Shown: in pieces, positions 7,477 through 44,999 of the stretch
Numbering within the stretch: position 1 is the first letter of the stretch
Layout: every line of letters starts with the position of its first letter
Source of the DNA: Oopsacas minuta
Taxonomy: Eukaryota > Animalia > Porifera
NCBI GenBank assembly: GCA_024704765.1
Contig: JAKMXF010000317.1
Location: forward strand, 62,001-126,000
Direction of reading: 5' to 3'
DNA length: 64,000 bases
The notes under the pieces: generated by a model
Told to the model about the DNA's origin: nothing
Databases searched by the model: none
What the model saw: only the letters and a program-made list of their open reading frames with translations
Program-made: the position numbers and the translations under genes

Positions 7477-7960
7477 TCAACATAGTGTAGCATCAATTTG
7501 GAGAAGATATTTCATAGATAGTTTAAGTTTTTTTCGGTACATTGGATCTTGTGAGATAGGGTTGTGCTCCAGATATATACAAGTAATTTTACAATGTCTT
7601 AACTCATCGATACTCTGCCAATTAGAAATTTCGTTATTGTTGAGCCAAATATTGTCAAGATCATGTAATTGAGAAAGGTTTTCTATATTCTGTATACGAT
7701 TATTCCCTAAGTCCAAGATTTGTAGATTAGTAAGCTTATCAAGACCAGATATTTCAGATATTTGATTGAAAGACAAATACAATTCAGATAAGTTACAAAG
7801 TGTTGATAATCCATCTATAATACTAATACGATTATTCTGGAGGCTAAGGGTGTGGAGATTAACTAGGGTTTGAAGCCCTTCAATATTCTCGATTTTATTT
7901 CTACCTAAAAACAACTTCCTGAGGTTAACAAGAGATTCAATATTTTCAATCTTCCGTATT
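7477..7960 (-). CDS. PPP1R7: PP1 regulatory subunit 7 (sds22), last coding exon
   Basis: SDS22-type LRRs and the LRR cap YLEHNPISQDPMYRKKLKLSMKYLLQIDAT (human YLERNPLQKDPQYRRKVMLALPSVRQIDAT). Acceptor ttctAG at 7962-61; exon starts a|ATA CGG AAG (IRK). Confidence 0.95.
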
Positions 7961-10310
7961 CTAGAAGAGTACACAATAAATCTTAAATTCAAGTGAAATT
8001 CTTAATTCAAAGAATATGGAATAGTAGAAGTGGACACAAGTACACAGAAAGTTCCCAACAGCCATGGAAAAACATAAGTTTGTTTCACACAATTACAAGA
8101 ATATGTACTAATAAAGTATTGTAAATAGCCAAAGCTTCTAATGGTAAAGTGGTAATCAGTAGAACCCCAGAGAACATTGATAAAATGTTGAGAACTATTC
8201 CCAAAGCAATGTGTCATGACCAATAACAAGCTCTGGGGTTATGAATATTCGATCTGAGTCACATAATATAATAATCACGAATATGGGTACACAAAATATT
8301 AGTGGTATGACATTCATGCACATCAGTACGACATTTTCTTACCTCATTGCTAACTAAACATAAGAACATTAGCGGATTAACTATGGTGCCAAAGGAGCCT
8401 TAGGCCCCCAGCCTAGAATTTTAACAGGCCTTGCGGTCTCAGGATATAGGATGGAATTCCTCTGTCTATAAAAGGACTTTCTAATTTAGATTTAATATTA
8501 TGCTTCATTCAGTATTCATGAAGTCATTATGGTTTGTGCATTCTATATTAGTGGTGATTTATAGAGTCTATATCCTACCTGATTATAATGACAGTTGTAC
8601 AAGAACAGAAGATATCTATAACTGCCAGTGGCGTCAGACTGGAGAGCTGACGGGGGGGGCAGAGCACCAGGGCACACAACCAGATGCAGATAAAAGGACA
8701 ATAATAAATTACTGTATTAATTGTCTGAAAAATGACTTTGCGAATTCAAGTAACAACTATGTAACACCCCTAAATCTAGATTACCCAAACACGGGGGTAT
8801 TGCATCCTGGAGCTCATAAGAGGCTGCTCAATTCGCTCGCAAAATTACCATCACTAAAGCGCCACTATCATTCTTTATGCGCAGGGCATTAACTTCTGAG
8901 AGATGCCGCTGGTAACAGCAACTCAAACGTAATGGGCGCCAGTCGACCTCACAGGCACTTAATCAGCCGCTGCTTAATACCTAAGGGTAAATTGTGAATT
9001 TTAGACTAGGGGTATTGTTTTCGGCAGGTGGATTTGTACTGTGGTCTGTATTGCATAAACGGTGAATTTAGCCCGATTACATGTATGCACATTTGTAGAA
9101 CAAGGAATTATCTTATGCTAAAAAATTCAGCATGTGCCAAAATATGTGTCTAGTAAGCAGTACTGAAGTAAAATCTACCATTGTTTGAGAGCTTGCAATA
9201 GCCAGTGTGACGTAAAATAAACACCAGGTCTAATGGGTCCTTGACCACTCAAAATTGATTCATCTAGTCAATATATTTCAACTTGACCGGATCAGAACTT
9301 GGACAAATGTTTATATTATTAAATCCAACCAAATATTATTGATTAAACACATCCAAACATAGATATTGTGATGAAAAAAAGAGGCCGCATCAACATTTGT
9401 GAGCGTGGCGATCTTCGAGCAAAATTGACTTGTTTTGACCCGCGATTTTCTCATTCAATTTCTGACCATCAGGCAAAAGTTTCATTGAAGTTGTATAGTA
9501 CAAAACGAAAATAGATTCTAATCTTGGATATTGGTCAGATAATCACTCAATTATTAGACAACAATTGTTTGTTTGTTAGACTAACTGAAAATTAATCATT
9601 ACTATTACAAAAATTAAGGTAATATGATGATTCAATACATTTTAGTAGTCTAACTTTAGCGGGATAGGAGATATCAAGAAATACAAGTTCCAGGACCCGT
9701 GCTGCCAGCCTACATTCCTTTATGATAGAGTCTATGGGTGAGCGGCTGGAAAATTTGAATGAAACTGTACACAAATTCAAATAAAAATTCCCTAAGTGGG
9801 GTAAATACCATTAGAACCTGGTGTTCTGGCACATTTGAAGGTAGGGTGACTCACAAAATTGTTTGAAAGAAGGATTTCTATTGAAGACCATAAGCAGATG
9901 ATTATCAAAAGTAGTCTATATCCCATAACTGGAGTAAATATACGATTAAAAATCCAAAGTAGGCAGTATGAAACTATAATTAAAGTATGAAGGGGAAATC
10001 TAATTACAATGGACGTAAATTAGTATTTATCAGAAGTGGGGTATTTAACAAAGTGTGGTGCAGAGTCTTGCAAATGCAGCGCGAATATATCATTTGGGAG
10101 GTTATATTGTATATACTAAACCCAAACCAAAGTACGAAATGCAATGGCAAACAATACATAAAGACTCAGCACTACACATAGGCTAACGACAGCGCTCAAA
10201 AAATAAAAAAATTTCTGAAATTATTATCGCTGTGTATAATGACTAAAGATGCTAATCAAATCCAATCGAGACAATTCATTATAACTTAATAGTATGGTAA
10301 TCGCTCAACT

Positions 10311-11133
10311 CAGTGTTTTTCAACCATTTTCACTTACTGCCCACTTAAGTGTTCAAATTTTACCAGATAACCCTTCTACCAATACTGAGTGAATATTCTA
10401 TAACAAATTTAGACCATATATTTAACATTTTGCAGGAACAAATTGATTCACAGCCAAAAAGTTATTCATTATTGATTCTGATGCTCCTAATTAATGCGAT
10501 CCTTGACATTAGTACTCACTTGCAAGCTTTTCAAAAATCTGTTTCAAATTTTGTTAACATCAAACGTAGTTTGCCAGATTTCGTTACTAGCAACTATTTC
10601 GCTATTTGGTATATACTCTCGTGACTGCGCTAAAGCCCTTCTCAACTAAGTAGGAAGTATGAAATGCAAAATTAGAAGCTAGGCCCTCTGCCATATAAGG
10701 ACCCACGCAAAGTATTATTTTTTGCATCCAGAAGCTAGAATAACTAAATTGCTTAAACTCTATTCGCATTTCTAGATCTGCTTGCTCTAATATTCCACCT
10801 TCCTACATACACTAATTCGATTGAAATCAATGTCGTATGGACTTTGTATTTGGTTTTTCGATGACACTAATGATGTATTTATGATCTGATTCTAGTTTAT
10901 AACTATTCACTGTATTTTGAATCCAAAATAATGCGTTTTGTAATTAACTGGATTGACAATCGAAAACTGGATCGGTGATCTATTAAAAGAATATACTATA
11001 TGTGGCCGTCTCTTTATCAAATTTACTCCTCTATCTAAATTATCAAATAATTATTATGTAAATAATCTCCGAGCGGGAATATTGGCATCCCAACTCTCCT
11101 AGGGGGTGATAAAGCCCAGGTTAAGAACCACTG
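10311..11133 (+). mobile_element. Degraded Charlie/Buster-like hAT derivative
   Basis: Termini cagtgtttttcaacc and ggttaagaaccactg, plus weak internal Buster-like remnants. No TSD match. Confidence 0.45.
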
Positions 11134-11552
11134 GATTCTCCTTTCTAATGTGGTTATATTAACTATCAGTACAATTGGAATAACCAGACCAATCCAATTT
11201 TGCAGCCATTAACATGTGCTGTTTTAGGAGTTAAATTCAAAGATAGGCAACTGTAGTAAAATACCGTATTTCCAAATGGAATAATCAGATTGGAATCGCT
11301 TAAAGTGAAAATATCGATTAATTTATCCATTGTCGATTTGATGAAATGAGGAAAATTTCCAATCATGTTTCAGTGCATTGGGCAATCTGTGTTCAAATTC
11401 AACAAACAAAAATCAATTAGTTGTGTTCAAGAACATCAGTAATCGAAAGAATTTCAAAATACACGGTGACCAATAAATACTGTTACTCGCGTTTTTAGTT
11501 GTATCAGTAAACTAAGATCCTAACTTGCTCTAAATCACTTTATGTAGTTATA

Positions 11553-12897
11553 CAGGGTGTAACGAAAGTGTTGATACCCTAGATACCTCATTAAAACTTA
11601 GAATATATTTGAGTTATTCGAAATATTATCGGTTTATATATGAACCATTTCGTTCTAATACAATTCTTATACGTTCCGGCATGCTAGCTACTAAATTCTC
11701 TAAAATGCTTGGGCTAATGTCTCTCCATGCTGATTTGACTGTTTCTATTAGCTGTTCACACCTTGTGATTTGGCCCTCTTCATTAACCTTCTCTTTCACT
11801 ATTCCCCAAAGGTTTTCAATAGGGTTTAAGTCAGGGGAGTTCCCAGGCCATTCAATCTTACGCCAGAAAGCATTTAAATGATCTTGACACCACTTCTGCG
11901 TTGCATTGGCCGTGTGTGCCGGTGCACCATCTTGCATGAAGATGAATTCAGACATATTTTCCAACATTGGCCGCTCCAAAACCGATCCATTATTTCGACA
12001 ACGGTGAACTGCCTCCATACAAGTCTTGGCCAAAATTTGATTAATGTAGTATGCACTATTTATTGATTGCCCTTGAGGGATTATATGCAGTTCTGAAAGT
12101 GCCTGATGTGACATCATGCCCCACACATGAATCTTTGCTGGAAACTTAACTGAAAATACCGAAGGAACATCTTGCTTATTCTTTGCCCAAACCCGATTAT
12201 TTTGTTTGTTTGGCGTTGCAAAGAGCTGGAAGGGAGACTCATCTGACCAGAGAACTTTTTTCCAGTCGTTAACTGTCCAATATTGATGCTTCCGAGCAAA
12301 ATTCAGACGATCTTGGATGTTCTTTTGGGATAACCGAGGTATTTCTTGCCTTTTGAAAGACCTAACACCCACAGATTCGGTCAAATGACGATACACACAC
12401 ATATGAGATACAGGATTGCCTCTATTCTTCAATCTCTGTGCAAGTTTTCTTGTGGATTGCCTGCATTTACCGAGTGACTTGGAAATAACAATTTTATCCG
12501 CCCGTTTCAAAATAGGAGGCCTCCCTGAACGAGGTTTAGTCACTAATGAACTACCTTTTTTATACAAACTAGATCATCGTTTCACCGAAGAGATTGAAAC
12601 ATTCAAGTCTTGGGCCACTTTCTTCTGTGTGAGCCCTGCATCTAGCATGCCCATAGCTCGAGAACGAAGCAAGATTCCATGATCACGGACATCCATTAAT
12701 ACGAAATAATGTAACGATGCTAAAATTGGAAAAAAATTCAAATATTTGAATAATATAAGTAATTAATGTAATCAGAAATAATCTAAAGTACTATAACTAT
12801 ATTTAAGAAAAGTATAGGAAACAAACTCTGTATGGTTCATTAATATTTAAGATTTTCATAGGAAAATAAAAGGTATCAACACTTTCGTTACACCCTG
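11553..12897 (-). mobile_element. Tc1-like DD37E element, nearly intact
   Basis: Perfect 26-bp TIR cagggtgtaacgaaagtgttgatacc with TA TSDs (11551-52, 12898-99), inserted in the 3' non-coding part of the DD37D element. Confidence 0.95.
11626..12696 (-). pseudogene. DD37E transposase (356 codons) with a single nonsense codon at 41
   Basis: ATG at 12696 is in frame with the 313-aa ORF; TGA at 12576-74. Motifs VLWSDES, FMQDGAPAH and SPDLNPIENLW. Confidence 0.9.
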
Positions 12898-14637
12898 TAT
12901 ATACTCAAATTATCATGTGTTTTGATCATTGCTCGAATATTCCACCTTTGGCTTTTACACAGCTCTTCAGACGTCCAACAAAGGACTCTACGCTTGCTCG
13001 CACCTGTTCTTCCGGAATTCTATCCCATTCACGTGTTAAAGCCGCTCGAAGATTCTCTAAACTTTTGTGAGGTTAAGAGCATGCTTTGGACTCCAAAATG
13101 GACAATATAGAATAATCGAGAGGATTCAAATCTGGCGAGCAGGGTGGCCATTCTTCCGGAGAAATATATGCAGAGCAATTCTCCTTGCATCATTTTTGGG
13201 TAGTCCTGGCTTTGTGAGCTGGTGCTGAGTCCTGTTGAAAGGTCCATGGACGACTTCTGAAATGGTTTTGGGTCCAGGGCTTTAAAACCGATTCGAGAAT
13301 AGACTCGCGGTAAATAGACTGGTTGATCTTAACACCTTGTGGATAAATACTAGAGGCGTCCGTTCATCTGAGGTCGCCCCGCCCAAAGCATCACAGAGGT
13401 TGGTTTTTGCGTCCGAGAGACACGAAATGAAGATTGAGGTAAAGACGCTTAATTTGTAGCCAATATTCTGTCATTTTGCTTATTTATTTGCTGTTCAACT
13501 ATAAAGAGCTTTCATCAGAAACAAATTTGATTCTGCAACCCACCAGTGAACCTCCCAAGTAGTGATTGACATCTATCTAGCCTTTTCTTTTAATTTTTGA
13601 CTGACAACAACTGTCTCTTCTGAAATTTATAAGAACTCATCGCTAGCTCGTTTCTCATTATTAATCTCATTGACTCATGCGCAACATTCATTTCTTTAGC
13701 TAGTTTTCTCATGCTTCTCACAGGATTTCGTGATATTCGGCGTTTCACGTTCTTTCTCAAGGTGGAAGTCCTAACTGTGCGTTTGCGACCTTCTCTTGAG
13801 CGATCTTGGATGCTTCCAGTTTCAAGGAACTCAAATATAGTTCTAGATACAAACTTCTTATTCGTCTTCAACGATTAGATAATTTCAGAATTTGAATGTC
13901 CGTTCTTGTGGAGTTCAATAGCCGCTGATCTCCTAGATAACATCGCATTTCGTGCAAGTGATTGAAAAATACTATACAATAATAGCCAAGTTCAATTGTA
14001 ACTCACTAGTTGTATAGTAACGTTCGTTATAGAACGATAAATCTAATGGTAGGATATGATCTGTTCGGCTATAGTGATGCATAAAGTGGTAACAGTATTT
14101 ATTGGTCACCCTGTATATTCGAAAACAAGCAAAAATAATCGCCAGGATAATATTTGAATAAATAGTGCGATATGATACTGCATACACTATCAGTGTATTT
14201 ACCCATTGTATAATTAAACACTTAAAATATTAATTCAAATAGCTCAATTGCTAAAGGTAATGCTAAAGTTTCAAGCCCATATCTGAATTCACACACACGA
14301 TATTTTACAGGCGTATTCGAATCGCCTACAAGCTCAAAATTTCAACTAATATTACTCTAGGAGTACGGAAAGTTGATCAAAACTCCTAGAATTAGATGCA
14401 TATTTACGGATATGACCCCAATGAAACAATGTTCTCAATCTATAACTGTTGTAATTATATACTAGGGTTGACAACACTATAACCCGTGAGGTTGAGAATA
14501 TTCGGCCAGCGGATTTTGAGGCTATGACACCACCAATTATTCTGCCCTCTCCATATAGGCCAATAGAAATTGTGGTATGGTCCACAAAGTGTTAAAATGG
14601 CGATAATGCGGTAATAGGTACTTACACGGAAGATATA

Positions 14638-15377
14638 CAGTGGGAGCCGCTTAATTTGGACAGCTAGGGAGTCAATGTTTTGTCCCGATTAACCGATTAT
14701 GATTATTCAAGTACTCAATACTAGTTTTCATTGTCATATGACCAGATATATCTTATTTCTATACTACTAATCCTGATTTATCTAGGGTCTAGTAGAGATT
14801 TGGTTGCAGTATGGGTATAGTTCCGATTCAAGTGGTCTAAAATGCATTACGCAATATACTTAAAAGTAAGAAAGTAAATTTAAATAATAAAGCATGTGCT
14901 TAGGACTGCAACCCATGCAAAAACGTTGGATAAGCAACAGTGTGGTCATTATTGAGGGAATTATACACGGTGGAATAGCCAATGGAAACTGAGGCGAGTG
15001 AGCAATGTTAATAATCTTAGTATAGTAAATGGTAATCGCATCGGTGTTGTATTGTTATGATTGTAGATAATATTCAAATTCCTAGTTATAGAACAAACCA
15101 TTTTACAATGATTGAGAATAAATATAGAATCATAAAATTGGGATAGAAATCCTAATTAATCGAATATAATTCATATCCGATTAATCGGGATAAGAAATCC
15201 TAAATAACCGATTATGAACTTTAAAATATTCAGGTTATCGGGATAAAAAATCCCGATTAACCAATTCAATGTCCCAATTATCCGACGATTTTCTATGTAA
15301 AAAATCTGTTCCCAAACTATTGTCCCGTTTAAGCGGATATCTCGATTATCCGAGTCCCGATTAAGCGGCTTCCACTG
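14638..15377. mobile_element. 740-bp non-autonomous pogo derivative
   Basis: Ends cagtgggagccgcttaat and ttaagcggcttccactg with TA TSDs. Both ends align with the pogo at 57825-60202; the transposase region is absent. Confidence 0.85.
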
Positions 15378-17972
15378 TATAATAAAATGTTGTTCTATAT
15401 AGTAAATCGACTCTGTAGATCTCAAAAATGGCACCAGATTTTTAGTTGCACTTCTGGAAATGGAACTATGACGTAATCTGTTGTATTTTGCTATAAATAT
15501 TAATTATGGTTCAAGAATAAATCAGTTCTAATTTTGTAAGTGTTTTATACCATCCAGCCCTATTTATTGATAAATTTGAATAACAATGCGTATACTAAAT
15601 TCATTTATGCATTGGTTACTTCATAAAATGATACTAATAAATTAGAAATACAGAAATTGTGAAATTCTTATAACCAAATGTAAAATTTACTAAAATACAT
15701 TTCATCCAATGGGTGTGCTCCATACACTTAATGTCAAGAAAAGTATAAGTGGACGCCTTTGGGCGGGCCTAGAAATTATTGAAAATGAAATTTAGAAAGA
15801 TATACTATGCGAAATTGTCAGTTATTCAACTCGTAATTGTTTGCATTGTAAGATCGGGGACCTAAAAGGTAGCTCAAGGAGTTGAAATATAGACAAAAGA
15901 TTGACAGGGGTAAAAAAGCTTGAGAATGAAACAATAAGGATTAATTTTGGTTTGCAAACCAGTTAAATTAATCACAAAATGCATAAGAATACTGTTAAAT
16001 GCCATTGAATTACTAAAATCCTGGAATGCTGAAATATCGCAAGGGTATTTGAAGTATACATATTTGTGGTTTTCAGGTTATCAAAGTTCAAATTTCAGCC
16101 TAAGTTCGAGGCCTTAGTTAGAAATGTTATAAGTTCATTAAGTAACTAATAATAGCATATTTCTAGGTTTAAAATAGTGTAAATCGAATGCACACATTAA
16201 TTTTGGTAAATAGCGATGTCAAATTTTAACCTATTACCGCATAGTTCCATACTGTGTGGCCTTCCAATCCCGTAGCCATTGCTCCAGAGGCCAAACTAAT
16301 CCACAACCCGAGAGTACGCCCCTGGATTAATTGGCTTTAAACAAAAAGCAAATTAATACAGGGCGCCATTTAGCGTTCGAGCATAGGATCGACCGTCTTT
16401 GTTCGAACGATAAATGGGTGGAGCAAGTTGCCCTAAGGGTTGATAGTCCTGTTTTCTTAAAACTCTCTACAGAGGTTTACGATCGTTTTCCTTGAACTAA
16501 TACAGCAGTTCCCAAACTTTAACACCCTGACTTAATAAAAAATGTAGATTAAAGTATTGCAGTACGATTACTTATTTTGTATAGGTGTGGTGGAGGAGGA
16601 GCTTGGCATCCCAAAATATTAAGTAGGCCTCTACAAAAAATTTGAACGCATTGATCATATCAATAAGAGAAGTTGGGAAACTGGATAGTATTTTAGAGGC
16701 TGTGCTCACATAAAATTCCACCAGACCCCTTCGAAAATCTTGTTGCTGCTACACCAATGGCATGGTCTCCCAAATAATCCGGACTATTGGATAAGCTGAA
16801 AGAAATTTGAAATAGCAGTTTGTGCAAATTAAATTTCATTAGACAACTGTTTATCGGGCACTTGTTTACTCTCTGGCTACCTCATTAAGTATAGTGAAAT
16901 ACGATTAATCAGATCATAAATAATGTAGATATAGACATAGGTTTGAAAATGTTAGAATCGAACCACCATACTCGATTACTCCTGACAAACATTTGGAAAC
17001 GTAAGTCCTAGAATATTTTGGAATAAATGCAAAAGGTGTAAAATTATGATTAATCCTCTGGTAATTATGTGAAATTGTACTTTCATGAAGTCTCAGATTC
17101 GGTCTTTAAGAATCAAATTACCTCCGACAACATATTGAAACCAAAATATTCAAAATTTCGATAGAGCAATAATTTTGGACCACCTATATATTAGGTACGT
17201 ATATGAAATATTTGAATTATACACATGAGGCAATTCTGCTTACCAGTAGAATAGCTCGCGTACCACAGTTTTAGAACAACTGTACTAAGACATTAAAATG
17301 GATGAAATATATAGTTAAGAGGAAATAACTTCCAAAGCAATGTAGGCGTAGCTACTAGGGCGTTCAATAAGTCTTGCGGGTGATATCATAGAATATGATA
17401 CAAACACTATACACACTAATTCACTATATTATTTCTTCAAAGTAATCCCCTCCTGCAGATACACAAAGTTGTAACTTTTCCACCCACTTGTAAAACACAT
17501 TTCTGTATTCTTCTTCGGGGATGGTTGAAGTACTGGTACAGGCCGGTTCCGAGTGCTTGTAATGTGTTAAAATCTTTGCTTTGAAGGTAGATATTAAACT
17601 TGGGGAATAGCCAAAAATCACACAGAGCTAGGTCTGGTAAGTATGGTGGATGGGAAGTAATTCTAACCCTTCTACATCCAAGAAATTTTTGGTAAGCTTA
17701 GCTGTATGGGAACTGGCGTTACCAATTAAGGAAGTCCGACATTTCGTTCCACGACATTTCGCTCCACTTTTGATTGGTCAATTTTTGTTAATTATTTAAC
17801 AGGTTTTAAATGGCTAAATAATAGAACTAATTTCTTGTCTGAATTCGTTTGGTTAATTCTAGCATAAATAAAATTGGTTTACAAGTTGCTTTGTATAATT
17901 TGCTAAATAGATTAACTAAGTAGCTTGTATAGATTCATTTAGATTGTGGTCGAAAATAGACATAGTATATTA

Positions 17973-19177: not shown

Positions 19178-19299
19178 TTATTAGAGGATGACATATATAA
19201 TTACGTAGTAGTTATTACAAACTGGTATAGCTTCCAGAGCAGTTGACTAGATCTTATTGCATTTGTTTCAAACAATTTTAGCGTCCTGGCGGATTCAGT

Positions 19300-32740: not shown

Positions 32741-34699
32741 TACCTTTTCGGCAAAAACGAATTATAAGGTGCAAGTTGGTGTAAATTAGATAAGAGATGG
32801 GGGATCAGTTTCTAGTTCGACACTACCTAACTCTACAGTATGTGAGTTATCTCTACGTGAATACAATGGATAACAATCCCATCCTCGAAGGAATGATAAT
32901 CAACTGGATAAAACATCAAAATAGAAACAGTGGCCTGAATATATTATATAAAACGGCAACACTCCTCTATCGAATGATACCAATTACGTTGAAATCAGAG
33001 CTGTACAAGTGAATAAGATTAGAAAATTTTAATATTTTAACATTTTACTCACTTCTTTTTGTCATAGTAGGTACACAGAACTTCATTGGAAATTCCGGTC
33101 TAAAATTTCAAATTGGATTCTGAAATACCATTCCAAATTTAGGAGATATTGACGTTTATGTGAATTAAATTAAATTTCCTACAACTTGCTTAGCTATCAG
33201 CTTTTAAAGTTGGAAATGGGAGTTGAGAGGATGGATTAGATTATACATAAAGTAGAGTAAGTTCAAACTGTTATTTCTTAACCTTTACAATACTGAATCA
33301 AAAATTATTTTGAATTTCAGCTTTCGTTTTCAAAACAACCCGTGTAACATTCAGTCAATTGTGAAAGATTCATTGACTAGAAATTCCCCTTTGGAATGTT
33401 CAGTTAGTCCCATTACCTCAGAAGAAGAGATTCAAGTGGGTCTTAGTCTTAATATGATAGATATTGCTGGAAGGGCATCACTAGTAACTTCTGCCATTGT
33501 AAGGATGTAGCTAAAAGCTTAGTTATGCCTTCAGATGCAGTTTCATCGTTTGGTGAATTCGATATAATGGATCTTCAATTCGATTTACGAAATCTACTTA
33601 TTGTGCCTGCATTTTCAGCTTCTGATTTAGCTTTATATGACATGCTGAAGAGACATTCCAAATGTTAGCTGATAGTGAATTAAGCGAATTTCCTAACTTG
33701 TTTTACTTGTTTAATACCACTGAAGCTCAGTTGTGGGTAGACTTTGTGAAGTTTTAGTGGGGGGAAAATTGTAAGCGAAATGTCCAGGATTGTTTCAATT
33801 AACTGAAGCCTGTTACATTGATGAGTGTTTTGAGTTAATCAATATAATTTCAGATAAGTATTCTAAAAGCTTTGTTGGGTGTAGCCCACTGTCAGTTTTG
33901 TGGGAAGTCCTGACACAGCCTGAAAATTGCTTATTCTTTCATATGTTAGGAAAGAAATGTGTTTTTAGTTGGAGAAATTTAAGTGCCTTCATTAGCTGTG
34001 TTCTGGAACTGAGGAATGAGTTTAACACTTACGTACCACATTAGAAAATATATATACTGAATATCTAGCGAATCGAGTAGACGGTAATGTTACTGAACCT
34101 ATTCCTATTCACCAGCCTTACAGCATTACTTGTTGTGTAGAATGCGAGGAAATGCTGAATCAGTTAGATAGAAGTCGGCTGTGAGATCGACATTAAAACT
34201 AATAAGTTCTGAGAGTTCTATCTTGAATTTTCTGAGTGGCATAGTATTTGTATTACCGAAGAACGTCTTTAGTAAGCAATTGGACAAACGTTTTTGCAGA
34301 CAAATTTCATGATATATATAGTAGGTTGGTAGTAAAATTCAGATCTTATTGGTTGAAAAAACTGATTGTCGTAAAGTAAACAGTCCTTTCCTACGAGCAA
34401 AGCAGAATGTAAAATTGTCGAGTTACCTATTTTATATTCAGCATGAGATAAGTATGTTCAATAATCGGGTAGTTGTCAAATTTTACTCGGAAGGATCCTC
34501 TCACCTCAACATACAGCTGGCACCAGAGTTATAGTCGCCATCATTCTTATAGTGAGCGCAGTAATATGGGAGGACTAGTAGTGAACAATTCAATTAATAA
34601 TATATATAATAACCAATTCAATACTTCTGATAAAACTGGTGGATCTTGTTATGGAATTTAACATACCTATAATCGGCTGATTGATAAAGGAAAGTGAAA

Positions 34700-35300
34700 T
34701 CTGAAATGAAATCAAAGAATAGGTTTTCTAATACATAAATGCAAGATGTGGGGGCTACCCAGCAATATTTTCGTTATCTGCTCCCTGATTATCCTATTCC
34801 AGGCTATGTCCAGTATTTTGTACAAGATCCGTTTATAATACATATGCACACTGCTAAACAAATCCAACTCTAAATTATTCAAGAACAAGGCTGTTGTTTT
34901 TAATTTAAATGCTACTGGTTCCCTAATTAGCAAATCTCCTTTTGTTCAAATAAAATATTTTATTACGCTCTGACAATACAACCCGAGTATTCTATCAGTC
35001 CGATACCAGTTGCAGAGATGATAAACAGTGATCATAGCACTGCTGAAATCTCGCATTTCTTAAACAAATGGTGTTTAAGTACAAAATAAGTTATTAATAG
35101 AGATTTATAATATATAAGGTGGAAATGGACTATAGTTGGGCGATGATACATAGCACATATTTAATATTTGATAAGTTTACTATTGTGAATTACGTCCAAA
35201 TTGTTGGAGATTGGTAATTAATAGTGAATATCTATTTAAAACAACTCTGCTACATCTATGTTCTGCTCATGTAATGCACAGGATTAGTTATAATTTTTAA
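34700..35300 (+). pseudogene. NOF-like MULE transposase remnant
   Basis: NLNATGSL, IFYYAL, PIPVAEMINSDH and VEMDYSWAMIHS correspond to LDATGS, FYYA, PVAEMISSDH and TDFSWA.IHA recalled for NOF-FB-like proteins. Confidence 0.55.
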
Positions 35301-36086
35301 ATAAGTAAAATAGATAAAAACAATAAAAGGAATAATTTTACATTTATTTGGTCGCATTTTGTACAGTAAAAATATTCATGAAATTGACCATCTATTTAAT
35401 TATTATGTTATGTTTCCTGATGTAAAAAACAATCTGTTGTTCTTCAAAATGGAATAGTTGAATTAGAGCAGTGTATTAGGAAGAGATTGTATTAAGGAAT
35501 GAACTTCCAGGAGATTTAAAGATGATTTGCTTGACTTATAGACAGAAGTCACCATTCGGCAAGCATTTTGAACCAATATATGATAACACTACTTATCATG
35601 TTAAAGAATGCAAAGTAATATAGGAACTATATATGTAATATTGACCATAGATAATCTACTAAGATAAAATCACTTGATTCCCAGAATTGAATGAATTGAG
35701 ATGCATGCATTAGATCGAATTTTAAGGTTGTCATTAGTTAGAATTTTCTGAATTGTAACAAGTTAGAATCAATTAATAGTCTATTGTAACAAGTTCGAAT
35801 CGATTTTTCGACTGGGTGGACACAAGTTGAAAAACAAAATATCCATGGTCTGGCATTCTGCAGACTTTACAAAGAATTAGTGCAACAAAAGTCCATCCAA
35901 ACACAAAATTACCATGAAGTCCACATCGCCGCCCCTAGGTAGCTTAATAAAGTGTCAAATGAAAACTCACAGATCCATAAGGTAGTGAACTAAACCCCTA
36001 ATCCCCTCCCAATGGCAGGGGTTTATAATTACTACAATGTAAAGTTTTTGCTGGGCCTCGTTTTGCCGCGCGACATCTCGGAAAAG

Positions 36087-36190
36087 TAGATTCTGACTTG
36101 TGACAACAGTCTGAAAAATAGATTCTGACTTGTGACAACTAAGGATATTCTGACTAATGACAACTTCGAAATTCTGACTAGTGCAACTTC
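36087..36190. repeat. Four degenerate copies of attctgact.gtgacaac
   Basis: Directly visible, with irregular spacing; the first two copies are identical over 21 bp. Confidence 0.7.
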
Positions 36191-36361
36191 TCCAAAATAA
36201 TAACAGACTTAGATGTCATAGAATTACGTTCTTTAGATTTACATAGATTTAATCCCCTTATAGGGGGCAAAAGGTATTATGTAAAGATTATGTTTAAATT
36301 TATATAATTCTATAGATTGTTCCACAAGGATATTCCCGGAAAATTAAAATGTACGGAAATA

Positions 36362-37273
36362 CAGTCAGGGGACAAAAGTATTCGACCACACAAATATATT
36401 GTCATAAATTGTATACTCTTTCCCGCTCCTATATATTGTGTAGTCTATATTCGTAGCTGCTATCTAGTAATTTGTATAGAATAACATATGTTTTCAAGAA
36501 TTTCAAAAAATATTTTAGATTGACACTTTTTGAAGGTGTTAATTATTAATAATTATTAGATAATTATTGATAATCAAAATATGTGGTAATTCAAAACCTA
36601 TTAAGAATCTATAATTTCTGACTTGACATTTGAATTCTACGTAGGCGAGTTACCCCAGATTGAAATTTCCAATCGGATTGAACAATTTTTACCAAAGTTA
36701 TAAAAGAATTTCAATTTGTCCCACTTGTGCCACTTTTTTCAAAAAGTGGCACAGGTGGCAGGAAAAAGCGCCACTACAAGGAAATCAACTAGGGTTAGGA
36801 GGAATAAGTCGAAGTAATATTTTCGAATGATATGACTATGCTAACCCTTGAATTCCAAAATAACCTCTTGGTAGCGGCCACTTGTGCCACCTTGGGCAAA
36901 AGGTGGCACAAATGGCACAAATTGAAATTCATCTATAACTCTGGTAAAAATTGTGCAATCCGATTGGAAATTTCAATCTGGGGTAACTCGCCTACGTAGA
37001 ATTCAAATATCAAGTCAGAAATTATAGATTCTTAATAGGTTTTGAATTACCACATATTTTGGTTATCAATAATTATCTAATAATTATTAATAATTAACAC
37101 CTTCAAAAGTGTCAATCTAAAATATTTTTTGAAATTCTTGAAAACATATGTTATTCTATACAAATTACTAGATAGCAGCTACGAATATAGACTACACAAT
37201 ATATAGGAGCGGGAAAGAGTATACAATTTATGACAATATATTTGTGTGGTCGAATACTTTTGTCCCCTGACTG
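36362..37273. mobile_element. 912-bp foldback Tc1-type MITE with about 390-bp inverted arms
   Basis: Starts cagtcaggggacaaaagtattcgacc and ends with its reverse complement; TA TSDs 36360-61 and 37274-75; outer 280 bp of the arms nearly identical. Confidence 0.92.
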
Positions 37274-40200
37274 TATATTCCATCTAAGATGCTTCATGTT
37301 CCCTTGAGATGGATATTGTGTATTTTCTTCTCTTTCATATTGTCTCATAGGGAGTATTGACAATTTACATACTATGCGTTCTTTCATTGTAGAAAATATG
37401 ATTGGAAAGTTGAAGGAAGAATGTAATAAGTGTATTTGTAACAAATTTCCACGATCTGTAATTATTATAGGAATGCTACGATTACATAATTAAATTAAAA
37501 ATGAGCAATAACTCAACATAGGGACCTGATGTTGGATTAATCGCATCAAACCTGTAAATGGATGGTATTTTCTGGGAGTGGTAAAATCGATCGAGGCACT
37601 AGAATCACTCCTATTAACCCATTTGGATTCATATATTTAAATAATAACGGAGTTCATTATGAGTCAATTGTAGGGGTAGATCTGGCAAATTTAAGTAATG
37701 AATACTTCCTAATAATTGAATTTTTATATTAGTATATGTAGTCATGATTAACCGGTGTATGCAATATATTACCTAATGTATTTGCGCAAAAATTTCGATA
37801 CTCTGTTCCAGAAAAGTAGGCACTAACTGACTTCTACTGTATGTACGCAATCATGAATATTACCATATATGGCTTTATTGATGACAATGCAATAATCTTT
37901 GTAGATATTATATCAAAATGTATTACAAGGGCATGGGAAATTGGGTATATACTATAAATCGGCAATAGTGAGTTTTGTTATATCATTGAGGGTTTTCGAC
38001 TTTGACAAATTATCACCATCCATGGTTACTACTGTAACTCAAAAAAACTGCCAACTTCATCATGACAAATTTTTATTATGATTTACAAAAGAATCTTTAC
38101 ATCATTTCGTAAATTAACTTTGAAATCAAAGATGCGATATTTGACGTTCTACAGCTCATCAAAGATTGGGTCATATTCCAAATAATACTTACTAAGCAAA
38201 GAAATTGCACTTTTTAATAATTATTTTTGCTTTGTTGGTTTGGGGACATAATATTCTACACATCTGTAATATATTTACTTGGTATAAAAGTACTGTTTGT
38301 GCGTTATGAAACCGTGCTGCATACTAATATAATATTTACCGTACACTACTATATCCCTAGCCCAAAGATTCGAGCTTGATTGAAGGCCTTATAGAGAGAA
38401 GGCTATGGTTCAGCATATGCATTTCCCACTGGATATGGCATTGTCACGTCTGGTAATTCTAGTAGTCCGTGCCTTTCGTGCTATAAAAATTCCAAGCTCC
38501 TACAATCAAAACTGTAGATTTTAATTATTTGCTAATTCATAATCACTTATTAGGCTGAAATGTGCATATTATAGTAATATATATTTAGCTGAACAATGTA
38601 TTAATCATATGTTCATCAATAACGTTACTAGATTAGAGGATATTGAGAATTTAGTGTTATGATGACGTAATAGAACAAAAATATGGAATTGACCATATTT
38701 GGGGGTGAGTACGCCTTTTGCCAAAATAAGGGTGAGGGAATGAGTTTTTTAACCTTGAAATTGTCATTTTTGAATTCAGCGCCCAAAGATTGTGTTAGAT
38801 ACCAAATTTAGTGACTAAAAATATAGAATTGACCATATTTTCAATCATACAATGTTCAGGCCTATGCATCTTTGACTGTGGTTTTACTTTGTCACGTCCG
38901 TGGTAATATAAAACAGGAAGGAGTATAAAATGAGGAACGAGTCATATAATTTTAAACTAGACCTTTGCATCAATAAATTGGAATTATTCCTAAATAGTAT
39001 TATTAAAGGAATCTTGTAAAGTACATGACATACTCGGAATAGGGGATAGGGGAACCGGAATCAGAGCCAAAGGAATCTGTAGTTGATAATTCAACTTCAC
39101 ATATTATGTAGATATCTGGATTAGTTTATTGGGTAGAATAATATTCAATGCCATGCTTAAATTCTGAAGAAAAAGTACCTGATGATACCCGAAAACCTTT
39201 GAGAAGTTCTTCATTATTATGAAACAAAATATGTACTTATAGACAAGCCAGAAGATTGACACAAGACAAAAAGCGACTTAGATTTTAAAATTGGCCATTG
39301 AGTTAAGTTACAATTACCAGGATCACTAGTCACAACACTGTCTGCCGTAGACAAAATGATTGAAGAGCTCTTCTACTGATGTACTTATAGTAAATAAGCT
39401 AAGTTAATGTTTAATTCTATGTTGAATATATTGTGTACATTCAAAATATTACAAATAGATGTGTATAATTCCATATAGATTTTAAAGTTCTGTTTAAATT
39501 GTCCACTAATACAAAGGAATTTCGTTAGAACTCCTAGCAGATTCTCGTTAGTCATTACTACGTCAATCTGATTAAAGTACATTTGTTAGAAAATGTATTG
39601 TTCAAGCAAAATTAGCTGATAAAAATTAGGAATCTTTTTTGAGGAGATCAAATTTGGTGGCAAATATGAAATATGTACTTGTTTGTTGTTCCTACATTTG
39701 TAATTCGCTGTATTTGGAAATTATTTAATTACTTAATAAACTTATAAAGAATTTGCTAAGTTACCTCTTGTAAATGAAAATTAGTATGGAAAAAGAAAAT
39801 GGTAACTAAAGCAAGTATGCTAAAGTGACTTCCTATACGTAAGAAAACAGTCATTGTGAATAGGCTCACAAGATAACAATCTATACAGCAGCTACAGTAT
39901 TGTAAAGACTAAGAAATTGAGAAATAATACATAATTTCAAAAAAATGAAAAAGTAGACATCCTGTTGTTCTTTAAGAAAATGAATTATAGAATACGATAG
40001 AAGGTCATTGTAAATTATGAAGTGATTCTGGTGGTAAGGATTTCGAGAATAGATATAAAACTTTGAGTCCGTAATACACAAAAACTGTGAACATAATGAT
40101 TTTGGAATGCTGTTGTGGGCTCTAATTTTTAGTATTTCACTATAATATTGATATAGTTAGAAAGGTTCACATCTAAACTATTGATTAGAATTAAAATAAT

Positions 40201-40469
40201 TTAGATTCAGCATGATGAAGGTTAAGAACAACAGTTTAACATTTTGTTCTTGTATAATCTAATCCATCCCCCGCAACTTACATTTCCAAATTTAACTCTG
40301 AAAGCTAATAGTTAAGCGAGTTCTAGGAAATTGCGAATTTAATCTAATTTAAGTAAACGTCAATATCTCCCAAATATAAGGAATTTCAGAATCCAATTCG
40401 AAATTTTAGACCAGTCGCTAGTCTGTCAAAATGCCCAAGAGGCTCTGGCGATCTCTATTGTGCAAAATT

Positions 40470-41410
40470 AGCAATAAAATAGGAGTCTCCACCAGAAAAA
40501 CGACTCGAAAATTCGATATCTCTCAATCATATGTTCATAAGATTATCAAAGAGAATGGTGTTACATATCGTAAACGTAGGTGAGTCCCAGATAGCAAACC
40601 CGAACAAGAATTGAGGGCTAAGTCCAGGTGTCTAAAATTACGGAGAGACTTTTTCCCCCATCAAGCACAACTCAAATTGTAATGGATGACGAATCGTATT
40701 TCGAACCAAAGGATGGCAATATCAATGTCAATAAGGATTATTATCTTTCAGAATCTCTCTCAGCCAAGTCTCTGAATCCTAGAATCAGTTATATTCGTAA
40801 ATCCAAGTACCCACCTAAACTTTTAATTTGGTTAGCAATTTCGAAAGAAGGCATATCGGAGCCATACTTTTGTCCTCGGAATCTTTCAGTTATTGGCGAA
40901 ATTTACCGAAATCAATGCATAAAAAAGCATCCAATTCCTTTCTTAGAAAAGTTTCATGATGAGGGTGAATATTACTTCTGGCCTGATCTAGCAGGTAGCC
41001 ATTATGCGAAAGATACGCTTAAACTTCTTGAAGATCTAAATATCCCATATATTCCAAAATCTGCTAACCCTCCTAATACACCTCAATTAAGGCCAATTGA
41101 GGATTTCTGGGGTTATTTGAAATCCAAAGTTTATGAAGGTGGGTGGGAAGCTAAATCCTTCAGAATGTTGAAGCAAAGGATTCGTAAATCAATTAGGCGA
41201 GTGGAATTTTCAATTGTCCAAAGGCTATTTTCAAGTGTCAAGATGAATATCCGAAAATCTGCAGACAATGGCCCATTAGCCGCGATCCATTGGGCTCTAG
41301 CTAAATTAAAATGTAATTAAACAAATATGATCGAATTATACAATACTCTGTTGATAATTGATACATGTTCAAACGGGATGAAATTTGTCTAAGTTTTTAT
41401 TGCTCCCCGT
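40470..41410 (+). mobile_element. 5'-truncated mosquito-type ITmD37E element
   Basis: VMDDESYF, FWPDLAGSHYAK and NPPNTPQLRPIEDFW (DD37E). Putative right end ...ttattgctccccgt-TA; no left TIR. Confidence 0.85.
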
Positions 41411-42009
41411 TAATGGATTCTTTTCATTTACTTTCAGCAAAACAACTATAACCAATTTAAATTCTAGAAGAGTACGAAGGTGTAGAATTTTTTCTCTTTC
41501 AAAATTTGTTAAAAATTTGGCAACTTTCCTTTCATAATGTATTGCTAGAGGCCATACAAAAGTTTGACCAATGTGAAATAGTGGTGCTTGGTGTCCGATT
41601 GATTAGCAAAGGGGAGGAGACACCCGACGAATATCTTCAATATTTCCCACATCATATTTCACCTTAATTCCATCTAGTTTAGGCTGAAGGGCTTTCAAAG
41701 AAAAATAAAAATAAAAAATATATAGGCAACCATTTCAATACTGGGCGACTATACTAAAGTACAGTCGGCACTGTAAAAAGTAAAAATTTTGAAATTTATA
41801 TATATTGCCTAAAACGGCAACACTCCTATATCGGATGATAACAATTAGGATTAAATCAGGTATACAAGTCAGTAAGATTAGTAATTGAAGTCCACATGGT
41901 CGAAGACTAGTAACTTCACACTCGTTCGATGTAAACTGAAGGAGTAATATGCATTGTAAAACACTAAAATGTCGAAATAATGGCACTTTAAGTAGCTCAT
42001 ATACAAATA

Positions 42010-44015
42010 CAGTGGAACCCCGCTTAACGGCCACCTCGATATACTGGCCACTGTTTAAAGTCCCGTTTAATATACTATAGACATTAACATCAATTTATTT
42101 CAGAATTCCGGCCACTCCGCTATTCCGAATTACGGCCATACTTTTAGAACGAAACCTTATTTTAACCTCAGAATTACGGCCAATCTTAACAATAGGAATC
42201 ACTATTGGATGTTTGTAAACGAAAACAATTTCTGGACAATTAATAACAATACATTGGAGTGTATACATATAAATGCAAAACATATTAATGAGACAGTAGT
42301 TCATACTTTATTAATAGCATCGAGCAAACGAAATGAGCTGGATCTCAAACGAAAAGTGGAGTTAATTCATAATTCTTCTGGACAATCGCATCGGCAATTG
42401 GCAGTAAGATTTAATATAGGAAAAAACCAAGTATCTTCCATACTCAAACGAAAAACAGAGTATTTGGCTGCTTATGAGAAAAATCAAAGAGGAAACAGAA
42501 AGCAGCATTGCTATTCCAACGAATTTAATGCTTGACACTGCTATGTGGGATTGGTTTCAATCTGCTCGTTTAAAAACACAACCCTCCCCGGGCCCTTGAT
42601 TCAAGAAAAAGCTTTAGAATTCTCAGCAACTTTAGGGGTTGACGAATTTAAAGCTTCAACGGCTGGCTAAATCGTTTTAATAAACGTCATAATTTAATGT
42701 GTGGAAAATAAGTGGAGAACGGGGATCAGTTGATGATACTACAATGATAGAATGGAAGGAGAAATTGCCATCTTTAATTACAGGTTATCAATTGCACGAT
42801 ATATTCAACATGGACGAGACGGGCATATTATTCCGTGCCCTTCCAGACAAGACTATGCATGAGCGGGCTAAAGGATGTACTGAAGGAAAACGCTCGAAAG
42901 ATCGAGTGACTTGCTTACTTTGTGTTAATGCGTTGAGACTTTGAGCAGACATTGATTATTGGACACTCTCTAAATCCCAGATGTTTTAAGAACATTCCGT
43001 CCTTTCATTTACCCGTAACATATCGTGCAAATAAGAAAGCTTGGATGACTAGCGCACTATACAATGAATGGCTAAATGCTTTTGACGCCAGAATGCGTAA
43101 TCAAAATCGGCATATCCTAGTGTTTTTAGATAATGCGCCATGTCACCCAAGAGGAGCTTCTTTAACCAACATAAAATTAATATTCTTACCAGCAAATATC
43201 ACTTCTGTTCTACAGCCACTCGATCAAGGTATTATCCAGTGTATGAAGTTGCATTATAGAAACGTCTTCTCCGTCGTGTGCTAAGACAGATCAATAATGG
43301 TTGTGAGGATGAAACAGTAGCGAAAAGCATTAACATCTTAGATGCTTGCCACTGGATAGTAGCTGCAGTAAAGGAAATACGTCCCAGCACAGTACAGAAA
43401 TGTTTTTCAAAATGTGGAATAAATTGAATTTCGAAGATGACACAGCAAATAACGAAGATGAAGAAATTCAAACACTAACGAAATTGCTCAACATTTCCTC
43501 GGAGCACAACATTTGTGATAATGCTATTGCTGATCCTCAATCATACGTCAACATGGATAGTGAAATTCAAGTTAATGACAATTTAGAAGGAGAATGGGAA
43601 TCGCGTATTCTGGAAAATTTACAAGAAAATGTAACACAGAAATATCTCTCTGACGAAGGTGAACCAATTGAGCACCCAGGACCGAAAAATTTGGTTTCAG
43701 CGATGCTTTATCCTGGCTTATGAATCTCAAAGTATTCTTGAAGGATAAGTCAATGACTGATGACCTCACTTTGATATCTTCTATTGAAGGTAGAGTTAAC
43801 GAAAAGGCCATTTCTGTATGTTTTCAGATAGCAAACAATCAAAGTTAGATGCATATTTTAACTAATAATTATGTATTAGCATGTTATAATTATTATGGTA
43901 TGGTAAATATTAAAAGAATATGGTTTCTTTCAAAAAGTTTCACAATTACGGCCACCCCGAAATTACGGCCATTTTTCTCGGTCCTGTGGGTGACCGTATT
44001 TCCGGGGTTCCACTG
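42010..44015 (+). mobile_element. pogo/Tigger (CENP-B-like) DD30D element, pseudogenised
   Basis: Termini cagtggaaccccg and cggggttccactg with TA TSDs. psq-HTH, IFNMDETG, FLDNAPCH and LQPLDQG, with frameshifts. Confidence 0.93.
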
Positions 44016-44432
44016 TACCTAATATCGACAGCGATTCTGCAGCAAATTTATCTAAATAGATTGTGAGCACTAAGAAAATACACTGAAAAGAACTACAGAC
44101 GCAAGAAGGTTGAGCCTGTAGATTGCTGACTAGATGCTGAAATGTTATAAGTATACCATGTAAAAGCAGCATTTAGAGGGAAATATCCCGAAAGTGGTTT
44201 TATTGGGTTTTTACACAGTATACCTTTTAAAATACCTATTAACAAATCTATAACTTGATTATTTCCAGAAATACTTTGGATTTCGACCGGTAACCCTAAT
44301 AATCGGTTGAAACATCTGGCTATAACTTAAATGAATTGTTTCTCAAATATGGGTAATTCTAGAGGATGAGCTATAGAAACAAAAAGCCACTATTGTTTGA
44401 ATCGGTAAACAATGTAAATAAGAAAATATTAC

Positions 44433-44902
44433 CTATTGGCACCCAGTTCTAACACAATTAGGAACTTAAGATGTGAGAGACATTGAATCTCAGATATCTT
44501 ATTTTGAATTAAATAGAGATTTTCTAATAGTGAGAGGGGTTCAAGGTTTTCGACCATTCGGACGTTGTTGAATGAAATATCAAGGGTGATTAAGTTAGGA
44601 ACATTGTTAAGAGGTTCTATTCTGTCAAGAAGGTTATCATAAAGATCTAACTCCTTCAAAAGAGGGAGAAATGGAATGCTCACTATTGAACTAATTTCAT
44701 TTCTTCTAAGGCATAAGATTTGAATTTGAGTAAATTGAGAAAGATCTGGTAAATGTTTTAGTCCACTGTGCATGAAATTAACTTCGGACTCATCAATAAC
44801 AGTTGTTTTCAACGAGTTTTGATTTAGAAGTTCAGAATTGCTGATATTAAATCCTTCACATTGAGGCAGGATAGTTGGGTCAGATGGATCGAAATTAGCC
44901 AT
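44433..44902 (-). CDS. PPP1R7: PP1 regulatory subunit 7 (sds22), first coding exon
   Basis: LCLRRNEI, LKELDLYDN, LDISFNN and LELGANR correspond to human LCLRQNLI, LRELDLYDN, LDISFNL and LELGSNR. Ends at a GT donor. Confidence 0.95.
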
Positions 44903-44999
44903 ATACTCTAATATAAATGGGTATGTGAGAATGCAAATACACTTACCGAGAATAAGTATTTCAACACAACTAAATGTACAATTATGTCCTGGTTATACG

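What the first reader, a model, noticed from the sequence alone, without database searches (positions are those of the whole stretch)
7477..44902. Conserved sds22/PPP1R7 gene split by one 36.5-kb intron filled with transposons
The two LRR ORFs 37 kb apart are exact complementary halves. Exon 1 ends GCC AAT AG|gt and exon 2 starts ag|A ATA CGG, giving an indel-free 317-aa sds22. The intron holds more than 20 recognisable TE copies or fragments, including an intact transposase gene on the opposite strand. A possible 39-bp 5'UTR intron (44946-44908) would put a micro-intron and a giant intron in the same gene. Sequence shows: junction and phase. Knowledge: sds22 is a conserved single-copy PP1 regulator. 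Inference: TE-driven intron gigantism tolerated in a housekeeping gene. Gene predictors are likely to split it.
Basis: partly seen in the sequence, partly recalled or inferred. Interest (0 to 1): 0.75.

Follow-up and report, generated by a model that had tools for sequence, protein, structure and literature searches.

The report
Sponge sds22 gene with giant intron
The only copy of a housekeeping phosphatase-regulator gene (sds22/PPP1R7) in this small glass-sponge genome is cut into two exact halves by a 36.5-kb intron packed with jumping genes; this is real and easy for annotation to miss, but it is a known kind of thing and recurs in this genome.

Summary
Observation confirmed. Two minus-strand ORFs (44902-44433 and 7960-7477) are exact complementary halves of sds22/PPP1R7. 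They align to human PPP1R7 residues 77-196 and 198-357, and the split codon AG|A supplies the conserved R197. In 110 of 112 full-length homologues exactly one residue lies between the two halves. The ends are GT..AG, phase 2. Each half is unique in the 61.46-Mb genome, probably Oopsacas minuta.

The 36,472-bp intron has no N, and at least 78% of it matches dispersed repeats: 23 or more nested transposon pieces, including an intact hAT and an intact mariner transposase ORF. Three related species break their ORFs at the same donor and two at the same acceptor, so the intron is old.

Older transposon copies in the intron carry 4-7.5% private substitutions and about 0.7-0.9 indels per 100 bp. A neutral coding sequence would stay open that long with P<0.001, so the gene was kept by selection while the intron was already loaded.

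Splicing itself is not shown: no RNA data was reachable. The 39-bp 5'UTR intron cannot be settled; its acceptor may instead take a spliced leader.

The scan found the same pattern before on other DNA of this genome (eIF3d, eIF2B-delta and others). Verdict: a real, ordinary example of a known phenomenon.

The parts
44433..44902 (-). sds22/PPP1R7 coding exon 1 (ATG at 44902-44900; 156 codons plus 2 bases; N-terminal tail and about the first five and a half LRRs)
   Evidence: ORF. Aligns to human PPP1R7 77-196. The MAN... start and the ...LELGANR* end are shared with three relatives.
44431..44432 (-). 5' splice donor GT (context AG|GTAATA)
   Evidence: The relatives' ORFs all stop at R plus a stop codon, as an AG|GTAA donor would give.
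7961..44432 (-). Phase-2 intron of 36,472 bp, at least 78% dispersed-repeat sequence. Only 411 bp (44022-44432) and 406 bp (7961-8366) at its two ends are unique.
7961..7962 (-). 3' splice acceptor AG (context TGTGTACTCTTCTAG|A)
   Evidence: Homology in relatives P0001 and P0002 starts exactly at R-IRKIEN.
7477..7960 (-). [quoted passage not shown]
   Evidence: Aligns to human PPP1R7 198-357, E 1.6e-57. The relatives end at the same ...QIDATxC.
7396..7401 (-). ATTAAA, candidate poly(A) signal 76 nt after the stop
   Evidence: Read from the sequence; not tested.
44908..44910 (-). TAG acceptor 5 nt before the ATG. It is either the 3' end of a 39-nt cis intron (donor GTAAGT at 44946) or a spliced-leader acceptor.
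   Evidence: Spliced-leader trans-splicing in glass sponges: PMC10282587. Earlier notes.
11543..12902 (-). Young Tc1/mariner copy with an intact 313-aa transposase ORF (11626-12567, sense to the gene) and a TA duplication. It is nested in an older 1.3-kb element (11459-11542 plus 12903-14118).
   Evidence: 99-100% identical to copies on at least 4 other contigs. Pfam DDE_3 and HTH_Tnp_Tc3_2. TIRs and TA flanks. Host element contiguous in C305.
17729..25970 (.). Foldback MULE (93-95% to other copies) carrying two later insertions: a 1.2-kb element at 17956-19184 (97-98%) and the hAT below
   Evidence: The same inverted structure is seen in copies on C177, C327, C301, C308 and C99.
22578..25009 (+). 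Young hAT element with an intact 564-aa transposase ORF (23043-24737), antisense to the gene
   Evidence: 99% identical to at least 5 other copies. Pfam DUF659 and Dimer_Tnp_hAT. The MULE copy on C177, which lacks the hAT, overlaps by 8 bp (680213-680220) where the hAT sits here, the size of a hAT target duplication.
14633..16258 (.). Two old non-autonomous elements side by side (about 750 bp and 875 bp), used to date the intron load
   Evidence: Many copies at 84-93%. Private branches of 0.043 and 0.075 substitutions per site.
30650..32006 (+). Mariner-like element, 96-98% to other copies, with its frame broken
33332..40412 (.). Old element of about 6 kb (73-83% to other copies), broken by later insertions: a 500-bp MITE (35637-36197), a 920-bp palindromic element (36343-37282, 95-98%) and a 1.06-kb element (37831-38911)
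   Evidence: Contiguous in the copy at C314:365374-369697.. Private branch of the 1.06-kb copy is 0.066.
40414..41419 (+). 1-kb element with a DDE_3 remnant (96%)
42025..44021 (+). Decayed pogo/Tc5 element (CENP-B_N and DDE_1 in separate frames), 94-96%

Best explanation
This is the single functional sds22/PPP1R7 gene of a glass sponge, probably Oopsacas minuta. Sds22 is the leucine-rich-repeat chaperone of newly made protein phosphatase 1.

The coding sequence lies in two exons joined by ordinary cis-splicing of one U2-type GT-AG intron in phase 2. That intron is old: related species have it at the same position. In this lineage it has grown from probably under 1 kb to 36.5 kb through 20 or more nested insertions of cut-and-paste DNA transposons, because the gene sits in a transposon-rich island.

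Shown: the exact junction, copy number, transposon content and nesting, the conserved intron position, and long-term preservation of the reading frame. Inferred: that the pre-mRNA is transcribed through the transposons and that the two exons are spliced together today.
For: - **Junction.** Exon 1 and exon 2 abut on human PPP1R7 at 196|R197|198. They also abut on the 359-aa outgroup P0018 at 196|198, and on 110 of 112 full-length homologues with exactly one residue between them. The ends are GT..AG.
- **Copy number.** Each half occurs once in the 61.46-Mb assembly. The next-best LRR loci are a 495-aa DRC3-like protein and an unrelated 336-aa LRR protein.
- **Ancestral intron.** Three relatives' exon-1 ORFs end ...LELGANR*. 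Two relatives' exon-2 ORFs switch from unrelated sequence to homology exactly at R-IRKIEN.
- **Selection.** Three old intronic transposon copies have private branches of 0.043-0.075 substitutions per site and 0.7-0.9 indel events per 100 bp. The 948 coding bases would stay open that long with P = 0.00002-0.0004. Identity to the outgroup (43.4% and 47.8%) is not lower than that of the relatives (40.7-43.0% and 43.7-47.8%).
- **Real insertions, not assembly chimeras.** The mariner has a TA duplication and its host element is contiguous elsewhere. The hAT shows an 8-bp overlap at an uninterrupted copy of its host. The old 6-kb element is contiguous on C314. The window has no N.
- **The full protein is needed.** SDS22 is essential, and a truncation at W302 is unstable and non-binding (PMC11199634). 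An exon-1-only product would therefore be useless.
Against:
- No full-length glass-sponge sds22 protein exists in the protein collection. It holds only exon-sized ORF calls.
- The youngest insertions (mariner 99-100%, hAT 99%) are too recent for the decay test, so a very recent loss of splicing cannot be excluded.
- The donor GTAATA is only a moderate match to the usual GTRAGT.
- An intact sense-strand transposase gene sits in the intron.
- The assembly is a hybrid SPAdes build from pooled, non-clonal specimens with scaffolding and gap filling (PMC10280926). The exact intron length, or the co-occurrence of all insertions on one allele, is therefore not certain.
- One of four tested PP1-binding residues is changed (E300 to N), and one is conservatively changed (F170 to Y).
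Confidence: 0.78

Rival explanations
1. The gene has only just been disabled. The most recent insertions pushed the intron beyond what the spliceosome of this short-intron genome can handle, or brought in terminators. The still-perfect coding sequence simply has not had time to decay.
For: The mariner (99-100%) and hAT (99%) copies are very young. The mariner is in sense orientation with an intact ORF. Typical introns here are 194-341 bp. No full-length protein is on record.
Against: This is the only sds22 in the assembly, and SDS22 is essential in yeast and human cells (PMC11199634). The gene stayed intact through at least 4-7% neutral divergence with a multi-kb transposon load already present. 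Earlier follow-ups report other essential single-copy genes of this genome with introns of 27-31 kb; those are unchecked leads.
Confidence: 0.07
2. The intron is real, but its assembled length or content is partly an assembly product. For example, it could be a composite of insertions that are polymorphic among the pooled individuals, or a mis-filled scaffold gap inside repeats.
For: The build was a hybrid SPAdes assembly of Illumina plus corrected PacBio reads from non-clonal specimens, then SSPACE and GapFiller (PMC10280926). The near-identical young transposon copies are likely polymorphic.
Against: The window has no N. Every insertion I checked has matching flanks and target duplications, or an uninterrupted copy of its host element elsewhere. 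The two halves are collinear and on the same strand, which a random misjoin would rarely give. The older insertions alone amount to well over 10 kb.
Confidence: 0.1
3. The two halves are made as separate transcripts and joined in trans, or the exon-2 acceptor mostly receives the spliced leader, rather than a 37-kb primary transcript being cis-spliced.
For: Spliced-leader trans-splicing exists in glass sponges (PMC10282587). In three relatives the exon-1 and exon-2 ORFs sit on contigs of different lengths.
Against: Here both halves lie on one strand of one scaffold in the right order, with a matched donor and acceptor in phase. Genic trans-splicing is rare (own knowledge). The contig-length argument is indirect: species identity of those ORFs is unknown, and a repeat-rich intron breaking assemblies would explain it equally well.
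Confidence: 0.03
4. Concerning the side claim only: the AG at 44909-44908 is a spliced-leader trans-splice acceptor, not the end of a 39-nt cis intron.
For: A TAG lies 5 nt before the ATG. Spliced-leader trans-splicing is reported in the glass sponge Aphrocallistes vastus (PMC10282587). Several earlier follow-ups on this genome report acceptors just before most start codons, some with RNA support; those are unchecked leads.
Against: A perfect GTAAGT donor sits exactly 39 nt upstream. By my rough estimate a match that good has only a few per cent chance of occurring within 100 nt.
Confidence: 0.55

Closest known systems
Human PPP1R7 / SDS22 (PDB 6OBN, 8B5R, 6HKW)
   Same: The alignment is collinear over LRR1-12 and the C-terminal cap, with one 1-residue gap. 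E192, F214, D148, D280, W302 and Y327 are conserved. It is the best hit in the solved-structure search for both exons.
   Different: The N-terminal tail is shorter (36 versus about 77 residues). F170 is Y and E300 is N. The coding sequence lies in 2 exons rather than many (human exon count from own knowledge).
Other transposon-filled giant introns in essential genes of the same genome (earlier scan notes: eIF3d 31 kb, eIF2B-delta 27.4 and 12.5 kb, WDR97-like 33.6 kb, Mondo 18.4 kb)
   Same: Single-copy conserved genes, short exons, and introns about 100 times the genome mean that are filled with DNA transposons and missed by annotation.
   Different: This case has just one intron and is, at 36.5 kb, the longest of those listed. 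I did not re-test those notes.
Nested-gene introns of glass sponges (Francis et al. 2023, PMC10282587)
   Same: Unusually long introns in an otherwise compact hexactinellid genome.
   Different: Those introns hold host genes. This one holds only transposons and their remnants: every ORF of 100 aa or more that I scanned is transposase-derived or has no Pfam match.
Transposon- and repeat-driven giant introns in other animals, such as Drosophila Y-linked fertility genes and long vertebrate introns (own knowledge)
   Same: Intron growth by repeat accumulation, with the coding exons kept intact.
   Different: Here it happens in a 61-Mb genome whose mean intron is 194-341 bp. No recursive-splice-site consensus was found in the intron.

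Membership tests
sds22 / PPP1R7 | Twelve 22-residue LRRs in collinear register with known members | tested here: met
   Exon 1 aligns to human 77-196 and exon 2 to 198-318 without indels. Pfam LRR_4, LRR_8 and LRR_9 hit both halves.
sds22 / PPP1R7 | C-terminal LRR cap | tested here: met
   Exon 2 residues 118-159 align to human 319-357 with one 1-residue gap. The YLEHNP...Y motif is invariant among the relatives.
sds22 / PPP1R7 | PP1-binding residues used in published binding mutants (F170, E192, F214, E300; PMC11199634) | tested here: inconclusive
   E192 and F214 are identical, F170 is Y, and E300 is N where the relatives have D.
sds22 / PPP1R7 | Orthology: best match is PPP1R7, and no closer paralogue in the genome | tested here: met
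   PPP1R7 is the top solved-structure hit for both exons. A profile search returns named PPP1R7/Sds22 proteins. Other genomic LRR loci score far lower and are not collinear.
sds22 / PPP1R7 | Binds and stabilises PP1 | not testable with these tools
   Needs a pull-down or complementation assay.
U2-type spliceosomal intron | GT...AG ends that restore the reading frame | tested here: met
   AG|GTAATA ... TCTTCTAG|A, phase 2. The split codon AGA gives the conserved R.
U2-type spliceosomal intron | Same position in related species | tested here: met
   Donor conserved in three relatives and acceptor in two.
U2-type spliceosomal intron | Removed from the RNA (junction reads) | not testable with these tools
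No spliced full-length protein is in the collection.
Spliced-leader trans-splice acceptor (for 44908-44910) | Acceptor a few bases before the start codon, with a leader joined there in RNA | tested here: inconclusive
   A TAG 5 nt before the ATG is present, but a GTAAGT donor lies 39 nt upstream. RNA was not available.

The most novel reading that the evidence does not exclude
This intron is one of a class of transposon-sink introns in essential single-copy genes of a very compact animal genome. The class may be old and shared among glass sponges, since in three relatives the two sds22 halves appear to lie on different contigs. Its removal would then need something beyond ordinary intron-definition splicing, such as stepwise splicing, help from the spliced-leader machinery, or transcription through silenced chromatin.
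Probability: 0.07. Interest if true: 0.6.

Novelty: new member of a known kind. Interest (0 to 1): 0.27.

Why it matters
The value is mainly for annotation and for claims of gene absence. The published gene set of this sponge was built with RNA hints capped at 5-kb introns (PMC10280926). The only protein on record for this locus is the exon-1 half. Genes like this can therefore be reported as truncated or missing, in a genome whose headline is the loss of core animal genes.

It also adds one more case to a pattern of 18-36-kb transposon-laden introns in a genome whose typical intron is 200-340 bp. That pattern is a usable natural test of how a short-intron spliceosome copes with extreme introns. 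As a single case it is a clear example of a known phenomenon, not a new mechanism.

Tried and rejected
- **Looking for a spliced full-length protein.** I searched with the 187-aa exon-1 open frame. I then searched with a profile made of a full-length outgroup plus the exon-1 sequences. Only exon-sized ORF calls turned up; the best full-length hits are 52% identical or less.
- **Joined model left out.** All searches were done exon by exon, by reference.
- **Alignment A3 discarded.** This alignment mixed exon-1 and exon-2 fragments with the outgroup. MAFFT slipped the LRR register, so I did not use it.
- **Retrocopy or paralogue rescue rejected.** L002 is DRC3-like and L004 is not collinear with sds22.
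- **Ciliate-type eliminated sequence or alternative genetic code.** I considered this early and dropped it. The genome has long standard-code ORFs, and its statistics match the published sponge assembly.
- **Recursive splice sites.** There are none of the form AG|GTRAGT on the sense strand of the intron.
- **Poly(A)-signal bias.** AATAAA occurs 24 times on the sense strand and 49 on the antisense strand, against roughly 33 and 42 expected from composition. This is suggestive but weak, because transposon copies are not independent.
- **Big representative search and structure prediction.** Neither was run: the family assignment was already clear.
Full report
**What is there.** On the minus strand, an ORF starting at ATG 44902 runs to 44433 and ends GCC AAT AG|GTAATA. 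A second ORF is entered at 7960, just after ...CTCTTCTAG|, and runs to a TGA stop at 7479-7477. The lengths are 470 and 484 nt, so together they make 317 codons plus stop, with a phase-2 split codon AG|A. Both pieces are leucine-rich repeats by Pfam.

**The junction is exact.**
- Against solved structures, both pieces hit PPP1R7/SDS22 first. Exon 1 residues 37-156 align to human residues 77-196. Exon 2 residues 1-159 align to 198-357, with one 1-residue gap in the cap.
- The one residue left over, R197, is what the split codon AGA encodes.
- The same abutment is seen on a 359-aa outgroup, P0018 (196|198).
- Among the fetched homologues of 300 aa or more, 112 align to both exon ends. In 110 of these exactly one residue lies between the two alignments. 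The two exceptions are LRR register slips.
I left out the step of joining the two exons into one protein.

**Which genome.** The assembly has 61,460,524 bases in 365 pieces. That matches the published Oopsacas minuta assembly: 365 scaffolds, 61.46 Mb, 36% G+C (PMC10280926; PMC10282587). Earlier follow-ups of this scan name the same species. I take this as probable, not proven. In that genome the mean intron is 341 bp, with 1.59 introns per gene. On one well-studied scaffold the mean is 194 bp. This intron is therefore 107 to 188 times the average.

**Copy number.** Each half occurs once in the genome. The next-best loci are a 495-aa protein that matches DRC3/LRRC48 along its length and a 336-aa LRR protein that is not collinear with sds22. 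So this is the only sds22. SDS22 is essential in fission yeast and human cells, and a truncation at W302 gives an unstable protein that does not bind its ligands (PMC11199634). An exon-1-only product would therefore not do the job.

**The intron.** It spans 7961-44432, is 36,472 bp long, and has no N. Searches of the whole genome with its pieces show that at least 28.4 kb (77.8%) matches dispersed repeats. This is a lower bound, because only the best candidates are scored. I count 23 or more pieces from about 20 insertions. Their identities to other copies range from about 70% to 100%, and they are clearly nested.
- **Mariner.** A mariner at 11543-12902 is 99-100% identical to other copies. 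It has a TA duplication and an intact 313-aa ORF. It sits inside an older 1.3-kb element that is contiguous on C305.
- **hAT.** A hAT at 22578-25009 is 99% identical to other copies and has an intact 564-aa ORF. It sits inside a foldback MULE. The MULE copy on C177, which lacks the hAT, overlaps by 8 bp where the hAT sits here.
- **Old 6-kb element.** An element of about 6 kb at 33332-40412 is contiguous on C314. Here it is broken by three later elements.
- **ORFs.** Every ORF of 100 aa or more that I scanned in the intron is transposase-derived or has no Pfam match. No host gene is nested here.
- **Unique ends.** Only 411 bp and 406 bp at the two ends are unique, which suggests an original intron of under 1 kb.
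- **Flanks.** The flanks of the gene are also transposon-dense, so the gene lies in a transposon island.

**The intron is old.** Word searches with each exon found ORF-style gene calls from three related genomes (58-70% identity). Three exon-1 ORFs start MAN... and all end ...LELGANR*, as an AG|GTAA donor would give. Two exon-2 ORFs begin with unrelated residues and become homologous exactly at R-IRKIEN. The pairwise identity pattern is the same for both exons, which suggests the same three species. If so, their two halves lie on contigs of different lengths. That hints at long or repeat-rich introns there too, but I could not fetch the contigs.

**Has the gene been kept while the intron was loaded?** For three old non-autonomous families in the intron I compared the window copy with 6-10 other copies. 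I did not build a consensus. The distances are star-like. The private branch of the window copy is 0.043, 0.075 and 0.066 substitutions per site, with 0.7-0.9 indel events per 100 bp. If the 948 coding bases had drifted neutrally for that long, both frames would remain open with probability 0.00002-0.0004. The protein is also not further from the outgroup than its relatives are. So selection maintained the gene after the intron already carried many kilobases of transposons. The test says nothing about the youngest insertions.

**What is not shown.** No RNA data could be reached. The protein collection holds only a 157-aa exon-1-only call for this locus (P0020) and no full-length glass-sponge sds22. 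The published annotation used TopHat with -I 5000, so it could not have received hints for this junction. The assembly is a hybrid build from pooled specimens with scaffolding and gap filling. The exact length, and whether all insertions sit on one allele, need long reads.

**The 39-nt 5'UTR intron.** The stretch GTAAGT...TAG at 44946-44908 exists. But a TAG a few bases before the ATG is also the footprint of spliced-leader trans-splicing. That mechanism is reported in the glass sponge Aphrocallistes vastus and noted many times in this genome by earlier follow-ups. I cannot decide between the two.

**Comparison and verdict.** The protein is an ordinary sds22 orthologue. E192, F214 and W302 are kept, F170 is Y, and E300 is N. 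The architecture, a conserved gene stretched by a transposon-filled intron, is a known phenomenon. The scan has already found it on other DNA of this same genome: eIF3d, eIF2B-delta, a WDR97-like gene and Mondo. This case is real, well supported by sequence evidence, and useful as an annotation correction. It also stands as a caution for gene-loss claims in this genome. It is not a new mechanism.

Noticed in passing
window 1-4672 versus G000:C317:229154-233827 (-): A 4.67-kb stretch at the start of the window recurs at 99% identity, inverted, about 160 kb away on the same scaffold. The match runs to the window edge, so it may be longer. It could be a large composite transposon or a segmental duplication.
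   Followed up: no
related ORFs P0021-P0023 (exon 1) and P0001-P0003 (exon 2): The identity pattern suggests the same three related species for both exons. Yet the exon-1 ORFs sit on contigs of 461,619, 1,341,922 and 1,293,643 bp, while the exon-2 ORFs sit on contigs of 15,964, 75,481 and 760,684 bp. The halves may therefore be on different contigs in all three.
   Followed up: partly
window 7961-44432, sense (-) strand: The poly(A) hexamer AATAAA occurs 24 times on the gene's sense strand and 49 times on the antisense strand, against roughly 33 and 42 expected from base composition. ATTAAA shows no such bias (28 versus 35). This is a weak hint of selection against terminators in a transcribed intron.
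   Followed up: partly
window 11543-12902 and 22578-25009: A mariner (99-100% identical copies on at least 4 other contigs, intact 313-aa ORF) and a hAT (99%, at least 5 other copies, intact 564-aa ORF) look recently or currently active in this genome.
   Followed up: partly
window 19178-22551 and copies on C177, C327, C301, C308, C99: The inverted duplication of the MULE seen in this window is a trait of the whole family: other copies match on both strands in the same way. It is not a local rearrangement.
   Followed up: partly
window 46523-48363: Inverted repeats of about 368 bp (94% identical) flank a 284-aa open frame (46956-47807, +) with no Pfam match. This is probably another DNA transposon with an unclassified protein.
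   Followed up: no
window exon 2, residue aligned to human E300 (DNIWLNNN): This sponge has N where human SDS22 has the PP1-binding E300 and where three related sponges have D.
   Followed up: no
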